A stretch of DNA of 64,000 nt, taken from positions 62,001 to 126,000 of the IMG/VR virus record IMGVR_UViG_3300033049_000066, one strand, 5' to 3'. The notes beneath the pieces were generated by a model that worked only from the letters and a program-made list of their open reading frames with translations, was not told the origin of the DNA and searched no databases. Within the stretch, counting starts at the first letter, position 1. The number at the start of each line of letters is the position of its first letter. Below, in pieces: positions 11,019 through 32,000 of this stretch. The position numbers and the translations under genes are program-made.

Positions 11019-11031
11019 GATAAATAACATT

Positions 11032-11346
11032 ATGAAATCACTAAAACACATTATGGAAGACGTCATTGATGACGACATGCGCGACACCGATAAACGCCGA
11101 GCCCGTCTCAAAGCAGAAGTTGAAGCAGGCATGGTCCCCGGTATTTACAATGCCTCCAGCAACGCAGACCCAGTATACACAATGGGCGACTTAGAAGCAC
11201 TTGGGTGGATGAGTCAAACTTATACACACGATAGCAGCGGCGAAGTTGACGGATGGGAACGTGATTACTTCGGCCCCAAACCAGTTAAGATTCTCAACCG
11301 CGCTGGACGCTCACGTGTTCTCAACCCAGGCGATCTCCTAGATTAA
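11032..11346 (+). CDS. hypothetical late protein (possible internal head protein)
   Basis: ATG directly after ATAAATA (11020); MKSLKHIME N-terminus. Confidence 0.55.
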   Translation: MKSLKHIMEDVIDDDMRDTDKRRARLKAEVEAGMVPGIYNASSNADPVYTMGDLEALGWMSQTYTHDSSGEVDGWERDYFGPKPVKILNRAGRSRVLNPGDLLD

Positions 11347-12721: not shown

Positions 12722-12980
12722 TGGTCCGCTAGCGATGATGGCAGCATTTTGCGTGGTGAGCCTGCGGGCATTTCAGCAGCAAAATGTCATTCACGGATAT
12801 TATAAGTGGGCAGCCGCCACAAGTTATGCCCTGGCGTTTGCTGACATCGCCATCGTGCTGGCTGTGGTTCAAATTGGCTGGTCGGCTGTATTGTGGATTG
12901 GAAGCGGCGGCGCACTAGGCGTAACATTTGCGATGTTTATACATAAAAAGTACATATATAAAGAACGTGCATCAAATTAA
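12693..12980 (+). CDS. small membrane protein
   Basis: about 3 hydrophobic segments; start uncertain. Confidence 0.55.
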   Translation: MLRRTKQVFNGPLAMMAAFCVVSLRAFQQQNVIHGYYKWAAATSYALAFADIAIVLAVVQIGWSAVLWIGSGGALGVTFAMFIHKKYIYKERASN

Positions 12981-13348
12981 TAATTACTACCACCAGCTGC
13001 GCTACAGCCACCGCAAGATCCGCCTTGTGCTGTATTTGAAAAAGCATTTTTAAATACAAAATGCGGATCGTTAGTTTTATCGTTGTAGTCGATTTGTACG
13101 CCACGCAAGAAACTTAGTGCCACGGCGTCGATATATAATAACAATCCATTTTGTTTAAGCACTGCATCGTACTCTGATGGCTTGTCAGAGAATGTCATTC
13201 CGTAAGTCATACCAGAACATCCACCTCCCGAAACAAAAATTCTTACACCGGTCTTATCATCTTCTTCTGCGATATATTGTACCAATGTTTCTGTAGCTAG
13301 ATCTGACACAATGACTTCGTCTGTTAATTTTGTTATAAATTTTGACAT
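12977..13348 (-). CDS. second A-type Fe-S carrier (ErpA/IscA/HesB family)
   Basis: GVRIFVSGGGCSGMTYGMTF ... SCGGC. Confidence 0.9.
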   Translation of the reverse strand: MSKFITKLTDEVIVSDLATETLVQYIAEEDDKTGVRIFVSGGGCSGMTYGMTFSDKPSEYDAVLKQNGLLLYIDAVALSFLRGVQIDYNDKTNDPHFVFKNAFSNTAQGGSCGGCSAAGGSNY

Positions 13349-13350
13349 TA

Positions 13351-14196
13351 CTAATCAATCACCGGTGGTTTTGGTAGTGCGGTTATCACTGCACTTGTAT
13401 CAGCTGAGATTGTAAAATTATCTATATAGAAATACGTGTTCTCATCGAATCCTGAATTCGACCAGCCAAAAATATACCCAGCGTCAAACCCTGTAATACC
13501 ATTGTCGGAATACCAATGCCCATTATGTATGTTGATTATCTTTGTAGTTATTCCGTTGCCGTTGGTCTTCCAGATTTCGTAAACACCGTCATTGTTTGCA
13601 CTGGTCGCATACTTCATGTGTATTTTCAAATGCATCCATTTGCCACGGTCCGCCCGTACAATGCCATTACTGGTTTGCCCGTTGCTACAAGTGCTACACC
13701 ACCAATTTACTGTATTCTTCTGACCATTTAATCCGTTCCGATGGTAGGCAATAAATCTACTGGTTCCATCACTATTTGCCCACAAATGTCCACCAAGTTT
13801 CGTAACAGTTTTATCACGATACTCACCTGTCCACATCCATACATAGGCTTTGTTGTTATCTGATCCAGGACCCTTGCGATGATAGTAATTTGATGGGACA
13901 TACAGATCATATTCGATCCACAACTCTCGATGCCTCGATGTTAGTTTAAACCGTTGTTCGGAAAAAGAGTCTTTGCCTATCGGTACCCCAGGGTAGCTAA
14001 ATTTCAGTGAGTATTTTCCACTTTTCGCCCTATCAGATGAGATGGATGATTTTACACCAGCCTGCCATCTAAATCCACTATTATTAACGAGTGAGCCAGA
14101 TTCAAAGCTAGTGGCATAAATTTCACCGGCTTGAACACTGCTAGCAAATATTAATAATAAAGCAGCAGTAAATTGTAATAATTTGTAAGTAAACAT
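13351..14196 (-). CDS. secreted beta-jelly-roll protein, polysaccharide-lyase-like
   Basis: signal peptide ending VQA; SDRAKSGKYSLKF, ELWIEYDLYVP, GKWMHLKIH, GVYEIW, YIDNFTIS; late motif CATAAATA on minus strand at 14231-14238. Confidence 0.65.
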   Translation of the reverse strand: MFTYKLLQFTAALLLIFASSVQAGEIYATSFESGSLVNNSGFRWQAGVKSSISSDRAKSGKYSLKFSYPGVPIGKDSFSEQRFKLTSRHRELWIEYDLYVPSNYYHRKGPGSDNNKAYVWMWTGEYRDKTVTKLGGHLWANSDGTSRFIAYHRNGLNGQKNTVNWWCSTCSNGQTSNGIVRADRGKWMHLKIHMKYATSANNDGVYEIWKTNGNGITTKIINIHNGHWYSDNGITGFDAGYIFGWSNSGFDENTYFYIDNFTISADTSAVITALPKPPVID

Positions 14197-14264
14197 AATT
14201 TTATCCTAGTTGGGCAGTAATCTGCCATAGTATTTATGCCGTTTTTGCTAGCTAATGAGGATAT

Positions 14265-14507
14265 TTATGCTATGTCTGCGTACATTCCTAGCACCGCGCC
14301 GATGATCTTGTGACGTTGTATGTCACAAGCGGTAAGCTCGCAGGTCGTGATCCCACCAACGGGGCTGTTGAGACGTTCGCACAGATCTATAAGCCCATTG
14401 TCTTTCTTACGTTTGTCAGTCTGTTCCACATCGCCAGTCACTACGATTTTACTACCCTCGCCTATGCGGGTGAGGAGCATTTTCATCTGACCGGGAGTAG
14501 CGTTCTG
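14265..14507 (-). pseudogene. phoH: displaced original 3' portion of phoH
   Basis: reads QNATPGQMKMLLTRIGEGSKIVVTGDVEQ... directly after an in-frame TAG; paralogous to the C-terminus of 15513-16244. Confidence 0.85.
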
Positions 14508-15755
14508 CTATAAATAAAAGTATGGACATCTATAAACATTTATGCACGAAGCCTCATAATTCACACCATCTCAAGCGTTATTATCAATTTTTGATTGAAT
14601 GCAGAGAACACAATGTGACTATCATAACTAATAAAGAAGTACACCATATATGCCCTAAGGCATCTGATTTATTTCCGGAGTTTAGTAATCTAAATTTGTA
14701 TGACTGGAATAAAATTGAGTTAACCTATCGTCAACATTTAATCGCACATTGGATGCTCTGGAAAGCGTATGGTGGCTCACAAGCCTACGCATTCTATGCA
14801 ATGAACAATCAAGTGAGCAAACGAGATGGGTGTAGAGTATGTCATAGTAAAATATATGAACAGGCTAAACTTGATGCTAGTATTACAATATCAAATACAA
14901 ACAGAGGATTCGCAGTATATGTTGATTCTGAAGGGCACAAAATTCGGTGCAAAATTAATGATTACCGAGTTAAAAATGGAACGTTGACATCGACTAGCAA
15001 AGGCCGCCAGTATACAGCACGTAGTGAAGAATCAAGAGCCCGGACTAGTGCATCTCTTAAAGGTAAGACTTACGGGCCTATGCAGGTTAGGCATCGGATA
15101 TTACGAAGAAAAATAAAAGTCCAGAAAGAATTGTTTTTCGATCAAAAAGAATATAAGTTTGAAATGATAGATAACTTGTATATTAATGCAAATCATATAA
15201 AGGTATTTACAAACGGCAGGCAGGTGTGGAACACCGACGGTAAGTATCGGCGGGTTAGCATAAAATTACCAATTTCTCCTCCTGGATGGTCATTTATTAA
15301 TCCTAAAATAATAATCAAGGCATTGGATATTACCGACACTAACTTTACAAGTTATATTGAGTGTTTCGGGACCGATTTGCCAAGTAAATATCATACACTA
15401 AGTTTATGCAAAATAGGAAAAGTGATGTTATATTGCACAACATTAATGAAAAATATTTACATTGACAAGGACAGTATTGCTACATACGGAATTCCCAGTA
15501 ATTGTACTCTGCCTAATCGCTGTACATTGCGATAATACTATCAATTATTGGGTGCCTGCAAATATCCTTTCGTTCCAGCTGACACGCTGCAATTGCTTTA
15601 TTCGGGTGTTGTTTTAACCGAGCTAATAGATCGGTTAACCCGTTACCTTTTGTAAATTTCTTATCGACTTGCTCAAGATCTCCGGTTATTACGATTTTAC
15701 TTCCTTTGCCGATACGTGTTAGCAGCATCTCCATTTGATTAACTGATGTCGACTG
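14508..15755. mobile_element. homing-endonuclease element carrying a replacement phoH 3' end
   Basis: HNH gene with its own TATAAATA (14509-14516) plus a divergent phoH C-terminus, inserted after the phoH DE-F codons. Confidence 0.75.
14522..15535 (+). CDS. HNH homing endonuclease
   Basis: EVHHICPK...NKIELTYRQHLIAHWML HNH motif; NUMOD3-like RSEESRARTSASLKGK. Confidence 0.85.
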   Translation: MDIYKHLCTKPHNSHHLKRYYQFLIECREHNVTIITNKEVHHICPKASDLFPEFSNLNLYDWNKIELTYRQHLIAHWMLWKAYGGSQAYAFYAMNNQVSKRDGCRVCHSKIYEQAKLDASITISNTNRGFAVYVDSEGHKIRCKINDYRVKNGTLTSTSKGRQYTARSEESRARTSASLKGKTYGPMQVRHRILRRKIKVQKELFFDQKEYKFEMIDNLYINANHIKVFTNGRQVWNTDGKYRRVSIKLPISPPGWSFINPKIIIKALDITDTNFTSYIECFGTDLPSKYHTLSLCKIGKVMLYCTTLMKNIYIDKDSIATYGIPSNCTLPNRCTLR

Positions 15756-16244
15756 AAACTCATCACCGATGATCCACGAGTGCTTGAAGGTACGACCCCT
15801 CATGAATGCTAGCGGAGCGATTTCCACGACCCCGGTCTCGAGCATTTTTGTAATTTCAAACGCGGAGTAATATTCGCGCATGACATCCAACAGGGGGCGC
15901 GTCCAGGGTGCCATCTTTTCTTCGAGTGTACCAGGTAAGAATCCGTGTTTTTCATCCTCAACGCCGACAGCTGGCCTAGTTAGCACGATACGTTCTATCT
16001 CACTTAGTCGTAATTTTTTAATCGCAGCTAGCATAGCAAGATAAGTCTTACCTGTGCCTGCCGGCCCATGCGCAATGACTATATCTTGCGTATCGTCTAG
16101 TAAGCCTATTATGTATTTTTCCTGGTTGAGCGATTTTGGAATTAGCTGAGTATCTCTAGCCTTGGTTTTTGCTTTTACAGCGTCATTGAAACTGACGACA
16201 CTGCGGGAATTCTTGTGTTGCATTTTCTTTCTAGGTTTTGCCAA
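15513..16244 (-). CDS. phoH: PhoH-like ATPase
   Basis: GPAGTGKT, LTRPAV, GFLPG, FMRGRTF, LLTRIG, GD motifs. Confidence 0.95.
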   Translation of the reverse strand: MAKPRKKMQHKNSRSVVSFNDAVKAKTKARDTQLIPKSLNQEKYIIGLLDDTQDIVIAHGPAGTGKTYLAMLAAIKKLRLSEIERIVLTRPAVGVEDEKHGFLPGTLEEKMAPWTRPLLDVMREYYSAFEITKMLETGVVEIAPLAFMRGRTFKHSWIIGDEFQSTSVNQMEMLLTRIGKGSKIVITGDLEQVDKKFTKGNGLTDLLARLKQHPNKAIAACQLERKDICRHPIIDSIIAMYSD

Positions 16245-16380
16245 TGAATATCTCCTGTGTTGTTAATTTATTTAACAATAAAACCACCACCGCAGTATGA
16301 GCACTTAAATGATGCTTTTCTATGATAAATATAGATGGTTCCATTAAATAGCAACCGCACATGAAGTCATAAATAACATT

Positions 16381-16968
16381 ATGAATGACGAATTATTTAA
16401 ATCAGACACAGACTTTTGGGCAATCGCAGATACTATAAAAAATATTTATATGTCAGATGGCGCATTAACTACATTACTTGATTTTGAAGGGGTTTTAGAT
16501 GAGTGTGATATTTACGCATTTAAAAACTGGATACTAGGTGAATTAGTTGAGGGGCCGGAAATTAGCCGGTACTCAGTAGCATGTACTTTTATGTGGCCCG
16601 GTCATTTAATGCCAGATCCAAAAGGTGCAAAACGCTTGCTACCATTCGATTGCAAGGTTAAATTTAAAAAGACAAAAATGAAAGTACCGCGCAAGGTTGA
16701 AGATGAATCAGACTTCCGCCCAGGTATACACAAACCTATACTAGACGCTATGCCAATTTGGTTAGTTGAGATTACTATGCCAAAAGATTTAATTGCAGAT
16801 ATACGAAGCGGGAGTATCGAATTAGAGGGCCAAGAAATTGACCTTGAAGACTTAGACCTTGGTTATGAAGAAGATTTAGATCAAGCAGCAACTATCGATA
16901 ACAACGAAGAAGAGTTACAAGACGAAGCCCAAGAACAAGACGAAGCAGATGAAAATCCATTTGCGTAA
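16381..16968 (+). CDS. hypothetical late protein with acidic tail
   Basis: CATAAATA at 16368; 195 aa. Confidence 0.7.
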   Translation: MNDELFKSDTDFWAIADTIKNIYMSDGALTTLLDFEGVLDECDIYAFKNWILGELVEGPEISRYSVACTFMWPGHLMPDPKGAKRLLPFDCKVKFKKTKMKVPRKVEDESDFRPGIHKPILDAMPIWLVEITMPKDLIADIRSGSIELEGQEIDLEDLDLGYEEDLDQAATIDNNEEELQDEAQEQDEADENPFA

Positions 16969-16983
16969 TAGGCGATATGACAT

Positions 16984-17589
16984 ATGACTAAAAAATTAAA
17001 TGAAGGGTTGGAATATAAAGATATGGTGGATATGATTAAGCCTACAGTATACATTGATGAATTCACCAGCAAGGTTGGCGAAGATGATGCTTATGTTGTA
17101 CTGAGTTTTTATGTACACAATATTATTGTCGCAGAAGATCTAGTTAATTGGTTTGAAACTGGTTATACATTCATCGTAGATGCAGACCGCAGCCTAGGCG
17201 AAATTGAACCCAATCGTTACCTTGTTTTTGCGGAAATCCAGCGCAGAACCCAGCTTGTCGCTCAGCTTAAAGAGATGCTTGAAGATTTTAGCACACTAAC
17301 CGACCTAGAATTAGAGGATTGGGACATAAATTACGATGGAATTGACTACAAATTCGACGCCGACGTACTTGGCGAAGTCCTACTACTTAGCCCACAGTCT
17401 TACCGAGAAGTTCACGAAGTTGAGCTAAATGAAATGCGCATCGCAGCTGGGCTAAAACATAAAAACGTGTACAACAGCACCGACGCAGCAATCAATAATA
17501 TTCGCACAGCAGCAAACCTACCTACTAGGCAAAACCCAGTTACTGACGAAGATCTTAAACAAATGCAACGAAACGCACGAATTATCTAA
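16984..17589 (+). CDS. hypothetical late protein
   Basis: 201 aa; LNE motifs at both ends. Confidence 0.7.
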   Translation: MTKKLNEGLEYKDMVDMIKPTVYIDEFTSKVGEDDAYVVLSFYVHNIIVAEDLVNWFETGYTFIVDADRSLGEIEPNRYLVFAEIQRRTQLVAQLKEMLEDFSTLTDLELEDWDINYDGIDYKFDADVLGEVLLLSPQSYREVHEVELNEMRIAAGLKHKNVYNSTDAAINNIRTAANLPTRQNPVTDEDLKQMQRNARII

Positions 17590-27968: not shown

Positions 27969-28007
27969 GTTACTCGATGTTTGATTTACAATAGCATAAA
28001 TAGTAAT

Positions 28008-28379
28008 ATGAAAACCTCATCAATTAATTTAATTCCGTACACCGCATTTGGTTCCGCCACAGGAAACTATGATCCGCTAGTCAACAGTGGAGATTTTAGC
28101 GGTGACCCCGGCAAGGCCGCAGCATATTATTCCAAGGACAAGAGCGTACAGACTGCCTCTTGGTACCTCATTGGATTCATCGGCGTCATCACCATCGAAG
28201 CTACACTTGAGAGCGATGGTACTACAGCAACATATTTTCCAATTCGTGTTATAGGCGATGGAGTAAATGCGTTAACTGAAAATGACTTCGAAAATTTAGA
28301 AGGTAATTATACTTGGCTTAGGGCTACTGTAACGCAGTTCACAGCTGGACAGATACAAAAAGTATCAATTGGGTACTAA
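28008..28379 (+). CDS. putative virion structural protein
   Basis: ATG after CATAAATA (27995); beta-rich, GNYTWLRA motif. Confidence 0.6.
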   Translation: MKTSSINLIPYTAFGSATGNYDPLVNSGDFSGDPGKAAAYYSKDKSVQTASWYLIGFIGVITIEATLESDGTTATYFPIRVIGDGVNALTENDFENLEGNYTWLRATVTQFTAGQIQKVSIGY

Positions 28380-29046: not shown

Positions 29047-29079
29047 AAACATCAGAACTCAATGGCATAAATACTGCTA

Positions 29080-32000
29080 ATGAATATCACAGAGCTCGAC
29101 AATTATAAGCTTGCGAAAGCAATTGATTTTAACACTGATTTAAACCCACAGATTTTCGTCAACGACAAAATGCGGCCGGTAGTGCGTGAGAAATTGATGG
29201 AGATAGCAGATCATTTTCGTGAATTCTTAGGCGTACAAAATATTGCCTTAGTAGATATAGAAGTTAGCGGATCCAATGCTGCTTACAGCTACACTCCGCA
29301 TAGCGACATTGACTTACACCTAATCGTAGATTTTACGCAACTTCCAGACAGTGATGTTTACAGAGAGCTATTCGACGCGAAAAAATATCAATATAACAAT
29401 CACCACGATATAAAAATTAAAGGGTACGAAGTTGAATTGTACGTCCAAGACGCAGCACAAAAACATCATTCCCTCGGCAGCTACAGCGTTCTGAATGACA
29501 AGTGGAATAAAATTCCAACAAAGCAACGCGCAAATCTCGACGACGACGCCACACTTTTAAAATATGAAAAATTAAAGGACCTTGCCATCCGCGCCTTGGC
29601 AGCCGATGACAACGAGTACTTAAATAAAGTGCTTGACGTAGTGAAGAAATACAGACAGGCTGGGCTTGATCAGCACGGTGAGTTCGGCCCTGAGAATTTA
29701 GCATTTAAAATGCTTCGCACTGATGGCTACTTTGCTAAGCTATGGACGAAGAAACGCAATCACGTAGATACCGAGCTTAGCCTAGAAACCGCTGTAGAAG
29801 AGCCGGACACCTTAGCCCAAGAATTGATGGCAGAATTTGTCAGCGGCGTATCACCTCAACAAACAGAAAGTATGATCAAGCGCATGTTCAAAGCTCGCTC
29901 AGGTCTGTTTGAAGATTTTGATTACACCTACATTCAAGACAGTGCCGCCAAGCTAGTGACCTTTGAAGCATCGTACGCAGGCAACCTCGGTGCCATGGAA
30001 GTTATGCAATTTTATCGTGACGCCCCAACCGATCACGTGGACCTACTAACGAGACTTATTGCCGCTGACAAAACTAAAGAAGCATGGCAGCTTATACAAA
30101 AAGTAACCGGCACCCAGTTACAAGGACAAGAGTTCAACGAAAGCGAAGCTAAATTTATCGCTGGCATGCGGTCAACCTTTGGTGCTGCCCTAGATGACAC
30201 TAGCGATACAGCCATAATTGAAGCATGGGACGTATCTAACCAGACGCCGGTGCCATCACCAGGCTACAATAAAATTATCGCTATGAGCACGACAGTACTA
30301 GAAGACGGTACTAGATGTACCGATATGGGGCTTGTAGCAAATTTCCTGGTTGCTGAAGCTAGTAGGAATAATCCGAAGGTCTTAGAGTCAAACACAGAAG
30401 AGACAATCACTAATATCGTACAAGAATTATTTAATTCAATGTCCGGGGTGACTCCGGTAGTTGGCAATTCATACGCAATTTTACAAATAATCGCACTAGC
30501 CTCAGGAGAGTCGATAATATTAAATGGGTCACGGACTCCACTTACGATAACAGAAGTAAATCAAAAAGATACCTATGTTGAGTACGTGTTTAAGACACAT
30601 GACGGTATTGTGCGCAAATTCCCAGACGAGTTGCATCTTGGAGCTCGTGTTGACAAAACATTCCTCTTTGAAACACGTGAACAATTAGGATCGATGGAAT
30701 CATTTTTAAGACTTAAAATGTCAAACTGGGCCATTACTGATCGGTTCTTAACTGAGGTAAGTACTGGCATCTGCGAAGACCCCATGACATGGATCCAAGA
30801 CGACGACCAAGATTTTATTAACCCGGTGCCAATTATTACCGACACCGAAGTATTTAACTTCATGGATGAAATAGACAGAACAGCCTATGAGATGTTCCCT
30901 GAGAATAAAGGTTTATCAGGCTCGGCATACGGCATGGCAATGAAAAAAGCTCGGGCAAAAATAGGAACAGTTGAGCAAGTGCCGATGCAGCAAATTGTTT
31001 CAACAGAAAAATATTTAAAGACAAGTCAACTTGCCGCAATTTTAAATGGCAAAGCAAAATCATCAAGTGACTATCCTATATTATATAAGCAAGGTAACAC
31101 ATATATCGCAGGTGATGGCAACCACCGCATTGCGGCACAGTTTATTAAACAACAACCTACAATTAAAGCCTTGGTCCTAGACGGCGCAAAAATACTGGAT
31201 GAAAATTTCATCGTCAATGAACAAGACATCGACTTAGTGGAAGAGATCCGGGCAGAATTTGAAGTACATAAAAATATCAAAGAGAATTTCATTGTCAACG
31301 AACAAGGTCGCATTGTTAAAGGATCGAATACAACAGATGACGTTGGCGTAGACGAAATTAAAATCCAAGCTAAAAAGATGGGCTTCAACGTATCAATTGA
31401 TGGCGTACCTGAAATTCCAAAGAACGGTGTACCTAAGATAATTAATTATACTGCTAAGATAGAAAACGCACATGCATCCGCATTGCGAGAGTTTCTAAAT
31501 AGTAATCAGTCATTGCTTGAATCACAAGACGATTTTAAATCAGTAAGAGAATTTACAAATTCGTACAAAACTAGTCCAATTATCGGTGAGAAATATGTGT
31601 ACACATCATTGATGATTACTCCGGCGATGGGATTTATAAACCTTGCACATACCGAAGAGGCAGAGTTAATTAAAATCAAAGCTGGTTATGTTTATTTTCG
31701 ATTAGCTAGCGGCAAGATTGCACAATATCCAAAAAACGACTCCGATTTAAATTCATCACTACAGCAAATATTATTTTTTAAAACCCTGACCGAGTTTGAT
31801 CAGTTTAAGGCCGCACTTATTTTAAAATTCGGACAATGGCGTATAACCCACAAGTTACTTGAAGATGCAGAACCTAAAATATTCAAATCAGCCGCGGTAC
31901 GCGAGATGAAGTGGGAAGACTCTGCTCACATTGAGTACATGGATGATCGCCTTGCTTGGGTCGAATCACAAATTGTCGAAGGCGTTACGTTGTTTGATTC

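What the first reader, a model, noticed from the sequence alone, without database searches (positions are those of the whole stretch)
14265..16244. Homing endonuclease that splits phoH and supplies a recoded replacement 3' end
Seen: full-length phoH reads ...GDEF-QSTSVNQMEMLLTRIGKG..., while a second, more canonical 3' half (QNATPGQMKMLLTRIGEG...) begins abruptly at the same Gln codon (14507), 1.25 kb downstream. Between them lies an antisense HNH gene whose late promoter TATAAATA (14509-14516) sits at the junction and whose stop overlaps the phoH stop region. Inference: an intron-less element that keeps its target gene functional and immune to re-cutting by bringing a divergent C-terminus. 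The junctions happen to be T|CAG and G|CAG, but there is no room for a ribozyme core.
Basis: partly seen in the sequence, partly recalled or inferred. Interest (0 to 1): 0.65.

Follow-up and report, generated by a model that had tools for sequence, protein, structure and literature searches.

The report
Homing-endonuclease cassette replacing phoH's 3' end
A selfish nuclease gene has inserted into the phoH gene of a jumbo phage, bringing a foreign copy of the gene's last 80 codons so that phoH stays whole, and the same cassette recurs at the same codon in related phages.

Summary
The minus-strand phoH (15513-16244, 243 aa) is a hybrid. Codons 1-163 and the detached 80-codon fragment (14265-14507) both resemble the uninterrupted phoH of the closest syntenic phages (about 82% and 78-85% aa identity). 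The attached codons 164-243 are only 55-57% identical to those relatives and fall in another phoH clade.

Between the two 3' ends lies a 1248-bp insert (14508-15755). It holds the foreign 3' end, a convergent MobE-type HNH gene (14522-15535) that overlaps the phoH end by 23 nt, and a 14-nt leader.

All eight full-length HNH homologues whose contigs I examined sit beside phoH. Seven are convergent and overlap its end. Four gene families keep a full-length remnant and three keep a stub, each starting at the same Gln codon of DExQN.

So this is a site-specific, intron-less homing cassette that carries a replacement C-terminus. It is a phage counterpart of the fungal mitochondrial "mobile ORF" gene hybrids.

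Cleavage, immunity to re-cutting and expression are inferred, not shown. The "late promoter" is plausible: the motif is conserved across cassettes and recurs at gene starts, although the exact octamer is not enriched. I rate it a new variant of a known kind, of moderate to high interest.

The parts
15513..16244 (-). Hybrid full-length phoH CDS (243 aa plus stop). TTG start with an AGGAG Shine-Dalgarno sequence 7 nt upstream.
   Evidence: Pfam PhoH positions 3-204 of 205, E 4e-68. ORF. Shine-Dalgarno sequence read.
15756..16244 (-). phoH codons 1-163, the resident (native-like) 5' part. The last codon or codons (F163, possibly H155) may already come from the donor.
   Evidence: 82% aa identity to L003/L004. 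Nearest tree neighbours are L004 and L003. dN to L004 is 0.126, higher than expected from the detached end.
15513..15755 (-). Attached foreign 3' end: codons 164-243 plus stop (QSTSVNQMEM...MYSD*).
   Evidence: Only 51-57% identical to the syntenic relatives. Best matches anywhere are 60-67% (P0001-P0003). Separate clade, SH-aLRT 97. GC 0.40.
14522..15535 (+). MobE-type HNH homing endonuclease gene (337 aa). It is convergent with phoH and overlaps it by 23 nt (15513-15535).
   Evidence: PHROG 655 E 2e-24. hhalign to T4 MobE 97.9%, E 5e-13. H41, H42, N63, H72 and H76 are invariant in 22 homologues. Full-length homologues are 43-55% identical (per-sequence identities).
14508..14521 (+). 14-nt leader of the HNH gene holding TATAAATA (14509-14516). 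It is the only non-coding DNA in the insert.
   Evidence: N(A/C)TAAATA lies 4-6 nt before the ATG in 7 homologous cassettes. ATAAATA-N5-ATG occurs 4 times in the window against 0.44 expected. The exact octamer is not enriched.
14508..15755 (.). The whole inserted cassette, 1248 bp: foreign phoH 3' end, HNH gene and leader.
   Evidence: Absent from 7 syntenic relatives. Direct-repeat spacing of 1248.
14265..14507 (-). Displaced native phoH 3' end (80 codons plus stop, QNATPGQMKM...). It is cut off from the gene by an in-frame TAG.
   Evidence: Pfam PhoH positions 129-204, E 2.4e-18. 78-85% identical to L003-L005. Sister of L004, SH-aLRT 95. No stop or frameshift; dN to L004 is 0.113 with dS saturated.

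Best explanation
A free-standing MobE-type HNH homing endonuclease gene travels as one compact unit with the last 80 codons of a phoH gene from another phage lineage. The two overlap tail to tail.

This 1248-bp unit sits inside the resident phoH, immediately 5' of the Gln codon of the conserved Walker-B-adjacent motif DE-x-QNAT. The resident 5' part now runs in frame into the imported 3' end, so a full-length PhoH is still encoded. The resident 3' end is pushed 1.25 kb downstream and is silenced by a stop codon.

Inferred mechanism:
1. The nuclease cuts cassette-free phoH alleles at or near this conserved site during co-infection.
2. The break is repaired from the cassette-bearing genome. Homology is supplied by the phoH 5' part on one side and by the retained remnant on the other. 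For the founding event the second side may have been joined by one-sided, illegitimate end joining.
3. In the invaded genome the target is split. Its downstream half is replaced by divergent sequence (QSTS instead of QNAT), which should prevent re-cutting.

Shown here: the anatomy, the foreign origin of the attached end, the native origin of the remnant, the recent date of the insertion, and the recurrence at the same codon. Inferred: the cleavage site, immunity, expression and the repair route.
For: **Origin of the three pieces.**
- Identity to seven syntenic relatives with intact phoH: 5' part 68-83%, detached end 69-85%, attached end 51-57%.
- C-terminal tree: the detached end is sister to L004 (SH-aLRT 95, branch length 0.16). 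The attached end is in another clade (97, branch length 0.79). Forcing the two ends together costs 9.2 lnL, AU p = 0.053.
- The attached end shares an indel and motifs (QSTS.NQ, GDLEQ, DK.F) with natural phoH of another branch, P0002/P0004/P0005.
- GC and GC3 link the attached end to the HNH gene, and the detached end to the 5' part.

**The cassette is one unit.**
- The attached end and the HNH gene physically overlap by 23 nt, and the insert has only 14 non-coding nt.

**Date of insertion.**
- The remnant has no stop or frameshift. Its dN to L004 (0.113) equals that between intact relatives (0.114-0.149), although dS is saturated. It was therefore part of a working gene until recently.

**Recurrence.**
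- All 8 contexts of full-length HNH homologues lie next to phoH; 7 are convergent and overlapping.
- Full-length remnants are present in L117/L125, L118-120 and L126. Stubs ('TTQN..') are present in L121/122, L123/124 and L127.
- Every remnant starts at the same Gln codon.
- All these contigs share the phoH-o16381-o16984 synteny with the window.
- Every attached end deviates from QNAT right after the Gln: QSTS, QNSS, QGTT or QNCT.

**Target conservation.**
- The site DEM|QNATPGQMKMLLT is conserved, largely even at DNA level, in 26 otherwise divergent IMG/VR phoH genes, all intact.

**Nuclease identity.**
- The nuclease domain is homologous to T4 MobE, and its catalytic His/Asn residues are invariant.
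Against: - No cleavage, homing or expression data exist.
- No close donor for the attached end has been sampled; the best match is 67%.
- The AU test against a common origin of the two ends is only borderline (p = 0.053, 80 columns).
- The 5' breakpoint is unresolved, and the 5' part itself is somewhat more diverged than the remnant predicts.
- Fold searches with the AlphaFold model did not recover a known HNH structure, and Pfam has no hit. The nuclease assignment therefore rests on the motif, on PHROG and on homology to MobE.
- T4 MobE and other free-standing enzymes often cut at a distance from their own insertion site, so the cut site need not be the junction.
Confidence: 0.8

Rival explanations
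1. A local tandem duplication of the phoH 3' end, followed by fast divergence of the attached copy, with an unrelated HNH gene landing between the two copies.
For: The two 3' ends are direct repeats in the same frame position. The AU test does not formally reject their monophyly at 0.05 (p = 0.053).
Against: - The ends are 54% identical to each other, while the detached end is 85% identical to L004.
- The attached end shares an indel and motifs with another phoH branch.
- Its GC matches the HNH gene.
- The HNH gene overlaps the attached end by 23 nt.
- The same arrangement at the same codon occurs in at least seven other gene families.
Confidence: 0.05
2. The detached fragment is the foreign piece, dragged in with the HNH gene from its previous host, and the attached end is native.
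For: The fragment abuts the HNH start, only 14 nt away.
Against: - The detached end groups with the phage's closest syntenic relatives, and the attached end does not.
- Its GC (0.52) matches the 5' part (0.46), not the HNH gene (0.36).
- It is the attached end, not the fragment, that overlaps the HNH gene.
Confidence: 0.04
3. An RNA- or protein-level element (group I or II intron, intein, trans-splicing), or a programmed switch that makes use of both C-termini.
For: CAG is present at both junctions. A related phoH (L117/L125) does carry an intein elsewhere in the gene.
Against: - No Rfam hit at E<=1.
- Only 14 non-coding nt in the insert.
- The attached end finishes with its own stop codon.
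- The remnant is preceded by TAG.
- The HNH gene is antisense.
- There are no inverted repeats that could serve an invertase.
Confidence: 0.02
4. A metagenome assembly chimera that joins two phoH variants from co-occurring phages.
For: The record is a metagenome-assembled viral contig. Reads could not be inspected.
Against: - The junctions are codon-exact and the insert has no slack.
- Independent assemblies from NCBI, ENA, JGI and Logan show the same architecture.
- Flanking synteny is intact.
Confidence: 0.03

Closest known systems
Fungal mitochondrial mobile ORF elements (mORFs) that carry a foreign gene C-terminus. Examples: Allomyces macrogynus atp6; Glomus atp6, atp9, cox2 and nad3 (PMC3630166, citing Paquin et al. 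1994).
   Same: An endonuclease ORF plus a foreign C-terminal coding piece is inserted into a conserved gene. The inserted piece is in frame with the native 5' part. The native C-terminus is displaced about 1 kb downstream and is the copy that matches close relatives. The inserted copy clusters elsewhere.
   Different: Here the host is a phage genome rather than a mitochondrial one. The enzyme is a MobE-type HNH rather than LAGLIDADG or GIY-YIG. The endonuclease gene is on the opposite strand and overlaps the replacement end tail to tail, instead of lying downstream on the same strand or being fused in phase.
Phage T4 MobE, a free-standing HNH homing endonuclease between nrdA and nrdB (PMC2790892, PMC2988022).
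   Same: The nuclease domain is homologous (39% identity over 80 aa; hhalign 97.9%). Both are free-standing, intron-less and sporadically distributed. A closer homologue, L084, sits between nrdA and nrdB just as MobE does.
   Different: T4 mobE is intergenic and leaves no gene duplicate. This protein is 337 aa against 141 aa, and its long C-terminal region is shared only with the phoH-associated subfamily. It sits inside the target gene.
Aeromonas phage Aeh1 nrdA split by a mobE insertion, the 'genes in pieces' case (PMC3045599; Friedrich et al. 2007, cited in PMC2988022).
   Same: A MobE-type homing endonuclease gene is inserted within the coding sequence of a conserved phage enzyme, and the enzyme's function is preserved.
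   Different: In Aeh1 the gene is split into two expressed halves that reassemble as protein. Here the gene is kept whole by an imported replacement end, and the old end is discarded.
[quoted passage not shown]
   Same: It offers a route by which a homing element with homology on only one side can enter a new site. This fits a founding event that left the native end beginning exactly at the break.
   Different: That work was experimental, used engineered substrates and concerned introns. It did not describe a natural cassette carrying a gene end.

Membership tests
MobE-type HNH free-standing homing endonucleases | HNH (beta-beta-alpha-metal) motif with conserved His...Asn...His, and homology to MobE | tested here: met
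   H41, H42, N63, H72 and H76 are invariant in 22 homologues. hhalign to T4 MobE 97.9%, E 5e-13; BLASTP 39% identity, E 5e-11. PHROG 655 E 2e-24. Pfam has no hit, and fold searches were uninformative.
MobE-type HNH free-standing homing endonucleases | Free-standing: own start and stop, not inside an intron or intein | tested here: met
   Separate ORF on the opposite strand. No Rfam family matches in 13300-17000.
MobE-type HNH free-standing homing endonucleases | Sporadic presence or absence among otherwise syntenic genomes | tested here: met
   Absent from 7 syntenic relatives and from L113 and L236. Present in other lineages that share the same synteny.
MobE-type HNH free-standing homing endonucleases | Site-specific cleavage of the endonuclease-free allele, and gene conversion | not testable with these tools
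   Only indirect evidence: the same insertion codon in all cassettes and a highly conserved target sequence.
Endonuclease-borne C-terminal replacement hybrids (mORF type) | The inserted C-terminal piece is in frame with the native 5' part and is phylogenetically foreign | tested here: met
Endonuclease-borne C-terminal replacement hybrids (mORF type) | The native C-terminus is displaced downstream and is closest to that of near relatives | tested here: met
   The detached end is 78-85% identical to L003-L005 and is sister to L004.
Endonuclease-borne C-terminal replacement hybrids (mORF type) | The endonuclease ORF lies on the same strand, downstream of or in phase with the inserted C-terminus | tested here: not met
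   The HNH gene is antisense, with a convergent 23-nt overlap. The same holds in 7 of 8 homologous contexts.
Endonuclease-borne C-terminal replacement hybrids (mORF type) | The hybrid is transcribed and the displaced end is not | not testable with these tools
PhoH (PF02562) | Full-length match over the curated cut-off, with P-loop and Walker B (DE) present | tested here: met
   229 bits against a cut-off of 27, positions 3-204 of 205. GPAGTGKT and GDEF are present.
Group I/II intron or intein | A ribozyme core, or an in-frame Hint domain, at the insertion | tested here: not met
   No Rfam hit. Only 14 non-coding nt. Stop codons at both junction sides.

The most novel reading that the evidence does not exclude
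This is a family of phage homing cassettes whose mobile unit is obligatorily three things together:
- the nuclease gene;
- a divergent replacement end of its own target gene, which keeps the gene working and destroys the target site;
- the retained native stub, which serves as the downstream homology arm and lies next to the nuclease's conserved leader.

Such cassettes would be repeatedly swapping PhoH C-terminal modules across a large lineage of big aquatic phages. They would thereby generate chimeric phoH genes, including endonuclease-free chimeras such as P0002.
Probability: 0.5. Interest if true: 0.7.

Novelty: new variant of a known kind. Interest (0 to 1): 0.6.

Why it matters
- **A third solution in phages.** Free-standing phage homing endonucleases are usually described as intergenic (T4 mobE, the seg genes) or as splitting a gene into two working halves (Aeh1 nrdA). 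Here the element brings its own replacement gene end. That solution is so far documented in fungal mitochondria.
- **A recurrent family.** It is not a single accident. It recurs with a fixed insertion codon, which offers a natural target site to test.
- **Domain shuffling in a marker gene.** phoH is widely used as a marker of marine phage diversity. Hybrid genes and orphan 3' fragments would distort phoH trees and amplicon surveys.
- **A decay series.** The remnants range from 80 intact codons down to stubs of 4-12 codons, which allows relative dating of invasions.

Tried and rejected
- **Near-identity DNA search in the phage collection:** no match.
- **Rfam scan of 13300-17000 at E<=1:** nothing.
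- **Pfam and NCBIfam on the HNH protein and its homologues:** no nuclease family hit.
- **PDB profile search:** only a spurious E 0.37 hit.
- **AlphaFold2 model** (pLDDT 84.8, pTM 0.45) searched with Foldseek against PDB and with VIA-align wide. The best matches were E 0.24 and Z 4.9 to helical repeats, which is uninformative.
No read-level check of the junctions, of cassette-free alleles or of RNA was possible, and read laying was not used.
- **TATAAATA as an enriched promoter word:** rejected, 2 found against 6.3 expected.
- **Locating the 5' recombination boundary** by sliding identity and dN: unresolved, because the 5' part is too conserved and dS is saturated.
- **Profile scan of viral contigs** returned the broad MobE-like N-domain family; only 7 of 80 loci lie near phoH. 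It was therefore not a census of the phoH-specific subfamily.
- **P0001 and P0003**, the best matches to the attached end: P0003 has no HNH gene, and the P0001 contig had no DNA available.
- **Inverted repeats for an invertase-type switch:** none convincing.
- **Left out on purpose:** I did not build, search or fold a joined model of the 5' part plus the detached end. The pieces were always analysed separately by reference.
- **One tree script** returned no answer and was rerun in 'quick' mode.
Full report
**Context.** The window is bases 62001-126000 of a 293-kb IMG/VR viral record, that is, a jumbo phage. No near-identical phage is present in the GenBank phage collection. The closest named PhoH proteins, at 53% identity, belong to PA5oct-like Pseudomonas jumbo phages.

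**Observation.**
- On the minus strand, 15513-16244 encodes a 243-aa PhoH that matches the Pfam model end to end (positions 3-204 of 205, E 4e-68).
- A second, isolated PhoH C-terminal piece of 80 codons lies at 14265-14507 on the same strand (Pfam positions 129-204, E 2.4e-18). It is preceded by an in-frame TAG.
- The two C-terminal pieces are 54% identical as protein. They lie in register exactly 1248 bp apart.
- Between them, on the plus strand, is a 337-aa ORF (14522-15535). Its last 23 nt overlap the end of phoH.

**Which 3' end is native?** Scanning IMG/VR with the PhoH protein gave seven contigs (L003-L008, L055) with the same gene order around phoH. The o16984 and o16381 homologues lie on one side, and in most contigs the o12693 and/or o12359 homologues lie on the other. 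In all seven phoH is uninterrupted.
- Identity to these relatives: 5' part (codons 1-163) 68-83%; detached end 69-85%; attached end 51-57%.
- All seven relatives read WIIGDEM|QNATPGQMKMLL. The DNA alignment shows homology of the detached piece starting at the CAG, possibly one base earlier. The attached copy departs from codon 163 or 164 onward: TTT CAG TCG ACA TCA against ATG CAG AAT GCA ACT.
- In a tree of the C-terminal 80 columns, the detached end is sister to L004 (SH-aLRT 95, short branch). The attached end lies in another clade (97) on a long branch. Forcing the two together costs 9.2 log-likelihood units (AU p = 0.053).
- The attached end shares 'QSTS.NQ', 'GDLEQ' and a one-residue insertion ('DK.F') with natural uninterrupted PhoH proteins of another branch (P0002, P0004, P0005). 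P0002 comes from a syntenic phage, L113, that has no endonuclease gene. The best match found anywhere is only 67%, so the donor has not been sampled.
- Base composition agrees. GC is 0.46 (5' part), 0.52 (detached end), 0.40 (attached end) and 0.36 (HNH gene); GC3 is 0.47, 0.56, 0.38 and 0.33.
The 5' half goes with the detached end.

**Age of the insertion.** The detached end has no stop or frameshift in 80 codons. Its non-synonymous distance to L004 (0.113) is the same as between intact relatives (0.114-0.149), while synonymous sites are saturated. It was thus under purifying selection for nearly all of its divergence, so the insertion is recent relative to the split from L004.

The 5' part is somewhat more diverged than the detached end predicts (dN 0.126, against about 0.07 expected from the N/C ratio seen in relatives). 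It also carries a few residues typical of other branches, such as H155 and F163, which are also found in P0001. Co-conversion may therefore reach upstream of codon 163, but the 5' boundary cannot be placed.

**The endonuclease.**
- Pfam and NCBIfam have no hit.
- PHROG 655 'homing endonuclease' matches at E 2e-24.
- A profile of 22 homologues matches T4 MobE at 97.9% probability, E 5e-13. The single sequence gives 39% identity over the catalytic region.
- H41, H42, N63, H72 and H76 are invariant.
- One homologue, L084, sits between nrdA and nrdB like T4 mobE.
- An AlphaFold2 model is confident locally (pLDDT 84.8), but fold searches were uninformative.
- The ORF is full length relative to its homologues, so it is probably active.

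**Recurrence.** A protein search found 24 full-length homologues (about 43-56% identity over 86-99% of the query). I looked up eight of them, and all eight lie next to phoH.
- In seven, the HNH gene is convergent with phoH and overlaps its end, by 4 nt, or by 23 nt in L126 as in the window.
- L117/L125, L118-120 and L126 have a complete phoH 3' remnant of about 80 codons, immediately upstream of the HNH start on the other strand.
- L121/122, L123/124 and L127 keep only a stub ('TTQNST..', 'TTQN..', 'TTQNVT..'). The 13-nt sequence ATTTTGAGTAGTT is identical in all three, although their HNH proteins are only 43-57% identical.
- Every remnant begins at the same Gln codon of DE-x-QN.
- In L117 and L118 the remnant again resembles cassette-free relatives more than the attached end does (for example 73% against 64%).
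- All these contigs share the phoH-o16381-o16984 synteny with the window at 38-54% identity. The cassette is therefore spread through one large phage lineage.
- All attached ends differ from the canonical QNAT right after the Gln: QSTS, QNSS, QGTT or QNCT.
- The target DEM|QNATPGQMKMLLT is conserved in 26 otherwise divergent IMG/VR phoH genes, all intact.
- The more distant homologue in L083 is also convergent with, and overlaps, a distant phoH, and has no remnant. In L128 the HNH gene follows phoH on the same strand.

**Mechanism.** *Shown:* a 1248-bp unit made of a foreign phoH 3' end and a MobE-type gene overlapping tail to tail, with 14 nt of leader. It is inserted at a fixed codon and leaves the native end behind.

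*Inferred:* the enzyme cuts cassette-free phoH at or near the conserved DE|QNAT sequence. Repair copies the cassette from a co-infecting carrier, using the 5' part and the remnant as homology arms. The founding event may have used one-sided, illegitimate repair as documented for T4 (PMC2988022). The split target, with a divergent downstream half, protects the carrier. The physical overlap of the nuclease gene with the replacement end means the two cannot move separately without truncation.

**Promoter claim.** The exact TATAAATA is not enriched: 2 occurrences against 6.3 expected. However, two observations make a promoter or start signal plausible.
- ATAAATA-N5-ATG occurs 4 times against 0.44 expected, and none of 100 shuffles reaches that number. 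All four lie in short spacers before plausible gene starts (11032, 14522, 16381, 28008). An N6 variant precedes a 1705-aa ORF.
- N(A/C)TAAATA lies 4-6 nt before the ATG in seven homologous cassettes.

No expression data could be obtained.

**Comparison with known systems.** The logic is that of fungal mitochondrial mobile ORFs that import a foreign C-terminus and displace the native one (Allomyces atp6; Glomus atp6, atp9, cox2 and nad3; PMC3630166). It differs in host (a phage), in enzyme family (MobE-type HNH) and in the antisense, overlapping arrangement.

Among phage elements it differs from intergenic T4 mobE (PMC2790892) and from the Aeh1 nrdA split (PMC3045599). Six literature searches found no description of a phoH-targeting endonuclease or of a C-terminus-carrying cassette in phages. 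The library lacks most subscription journals, so this absence is not proof.

**Limits.**
- There is no biochemical, read-level or RNA evidence.
- The donor is unsampled.
- The C-terminal tree has only 80 columns.
- The census covers 8 of 24 homologues.
- I did not construct or search a joined sequence of the 5' part plus the detached end. The pieces were handled separately by reference.

**Verdict.** This is a new variant of a known kind of selfish element, and it forms a recurrent family. Interest 0.6.

Noticed in passing
window 11020-11034, 14510-14524, 16369-16383, 27996-28010; also 29067-29082: The motif ATAAATA-N5-ATG (N6 at 29067) lies in short intergenic spacers directly before gene starts. 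These include a virion structural protein gene (16381) and a 1705-aa ORF (29080). There are 4 exact hits against 0.44 expected. It may be this phage's promoter or start signal for near-leaderless genes.
   Followed up: partly
L117:4999-6783 (-) and L125:3903-5687 (-): In these related contigs phoH is 594 aa. It carries an intein-like insert (LAGLIDADG_3 hit) inside the P-loop (GPAGTGK|...|T), in addition to the HNH cassette and the 3' remnant. The same gene has been invaded twice.
   Followed up: partly
window 12977-14196 (-): Two genes lie between the phoH remnant and the o12693 homologue: a 123-aa Fe-S cluster biosynthesis (HesB/IscA-type, PF01521) protein and a 281-aa ORF with a hydrophobic, signal-peptide-like N-terminus and no family match. 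Both are absent at this position in L004 and L005, so this is a variable spot next to the cassette.
   Followed up: partly
L115:808-1743 (-) = G000:C1 about 263561-264496 (outside the window): The same genome holds a second MobE-like HNH gene (311 aa, 42% identical in the nuclease motif). It lies between a 459-aa ORF and a 145-aa ORF, neither of which was searched against any family. No duplicated gene end was noticed in the ORF list of this locus.
   Followed up: partly
L121, L123, L127: about 20-35 nt upstream of the HNH start: An identical 13-nt sequence, ATTTTGAGTAGTT (the reverse complement encodes T-T-Q-N of the phoH stub), is kept in three cassettes whose HNH proteins are only 43-57% identical. 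It may be a constrained site, such as a binding half-site, a promoter part or a homology arm.
   Followed up: no
L009:5001-5698 (= L135): phoH in contig IMGVR_UViG_3300033153_001580 changes frame after ...QMKMLLTRI. This is either a frameshift or a sequencing error in an otherwise intact relative.
   Followed up: no
L113:5001-5738 (P0002): This syntenic phage has no endonuclease gene, yet its phoH 5' part groups with the window's relatives while its 3' end is of the 'QSTS' type. It may be a chimera left after loss of a cassette, or a member of the donor lineage.
   Followed up: partly
L128:2024-4275: Here a full-length HNH homologue (48% identical) lies downstream of phoH on the SAME strand. 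It is called with a roughly 50-aa N-terminal extension, and no remnant was detected. This is a different arrangement of the same pair.
   Followed up: no
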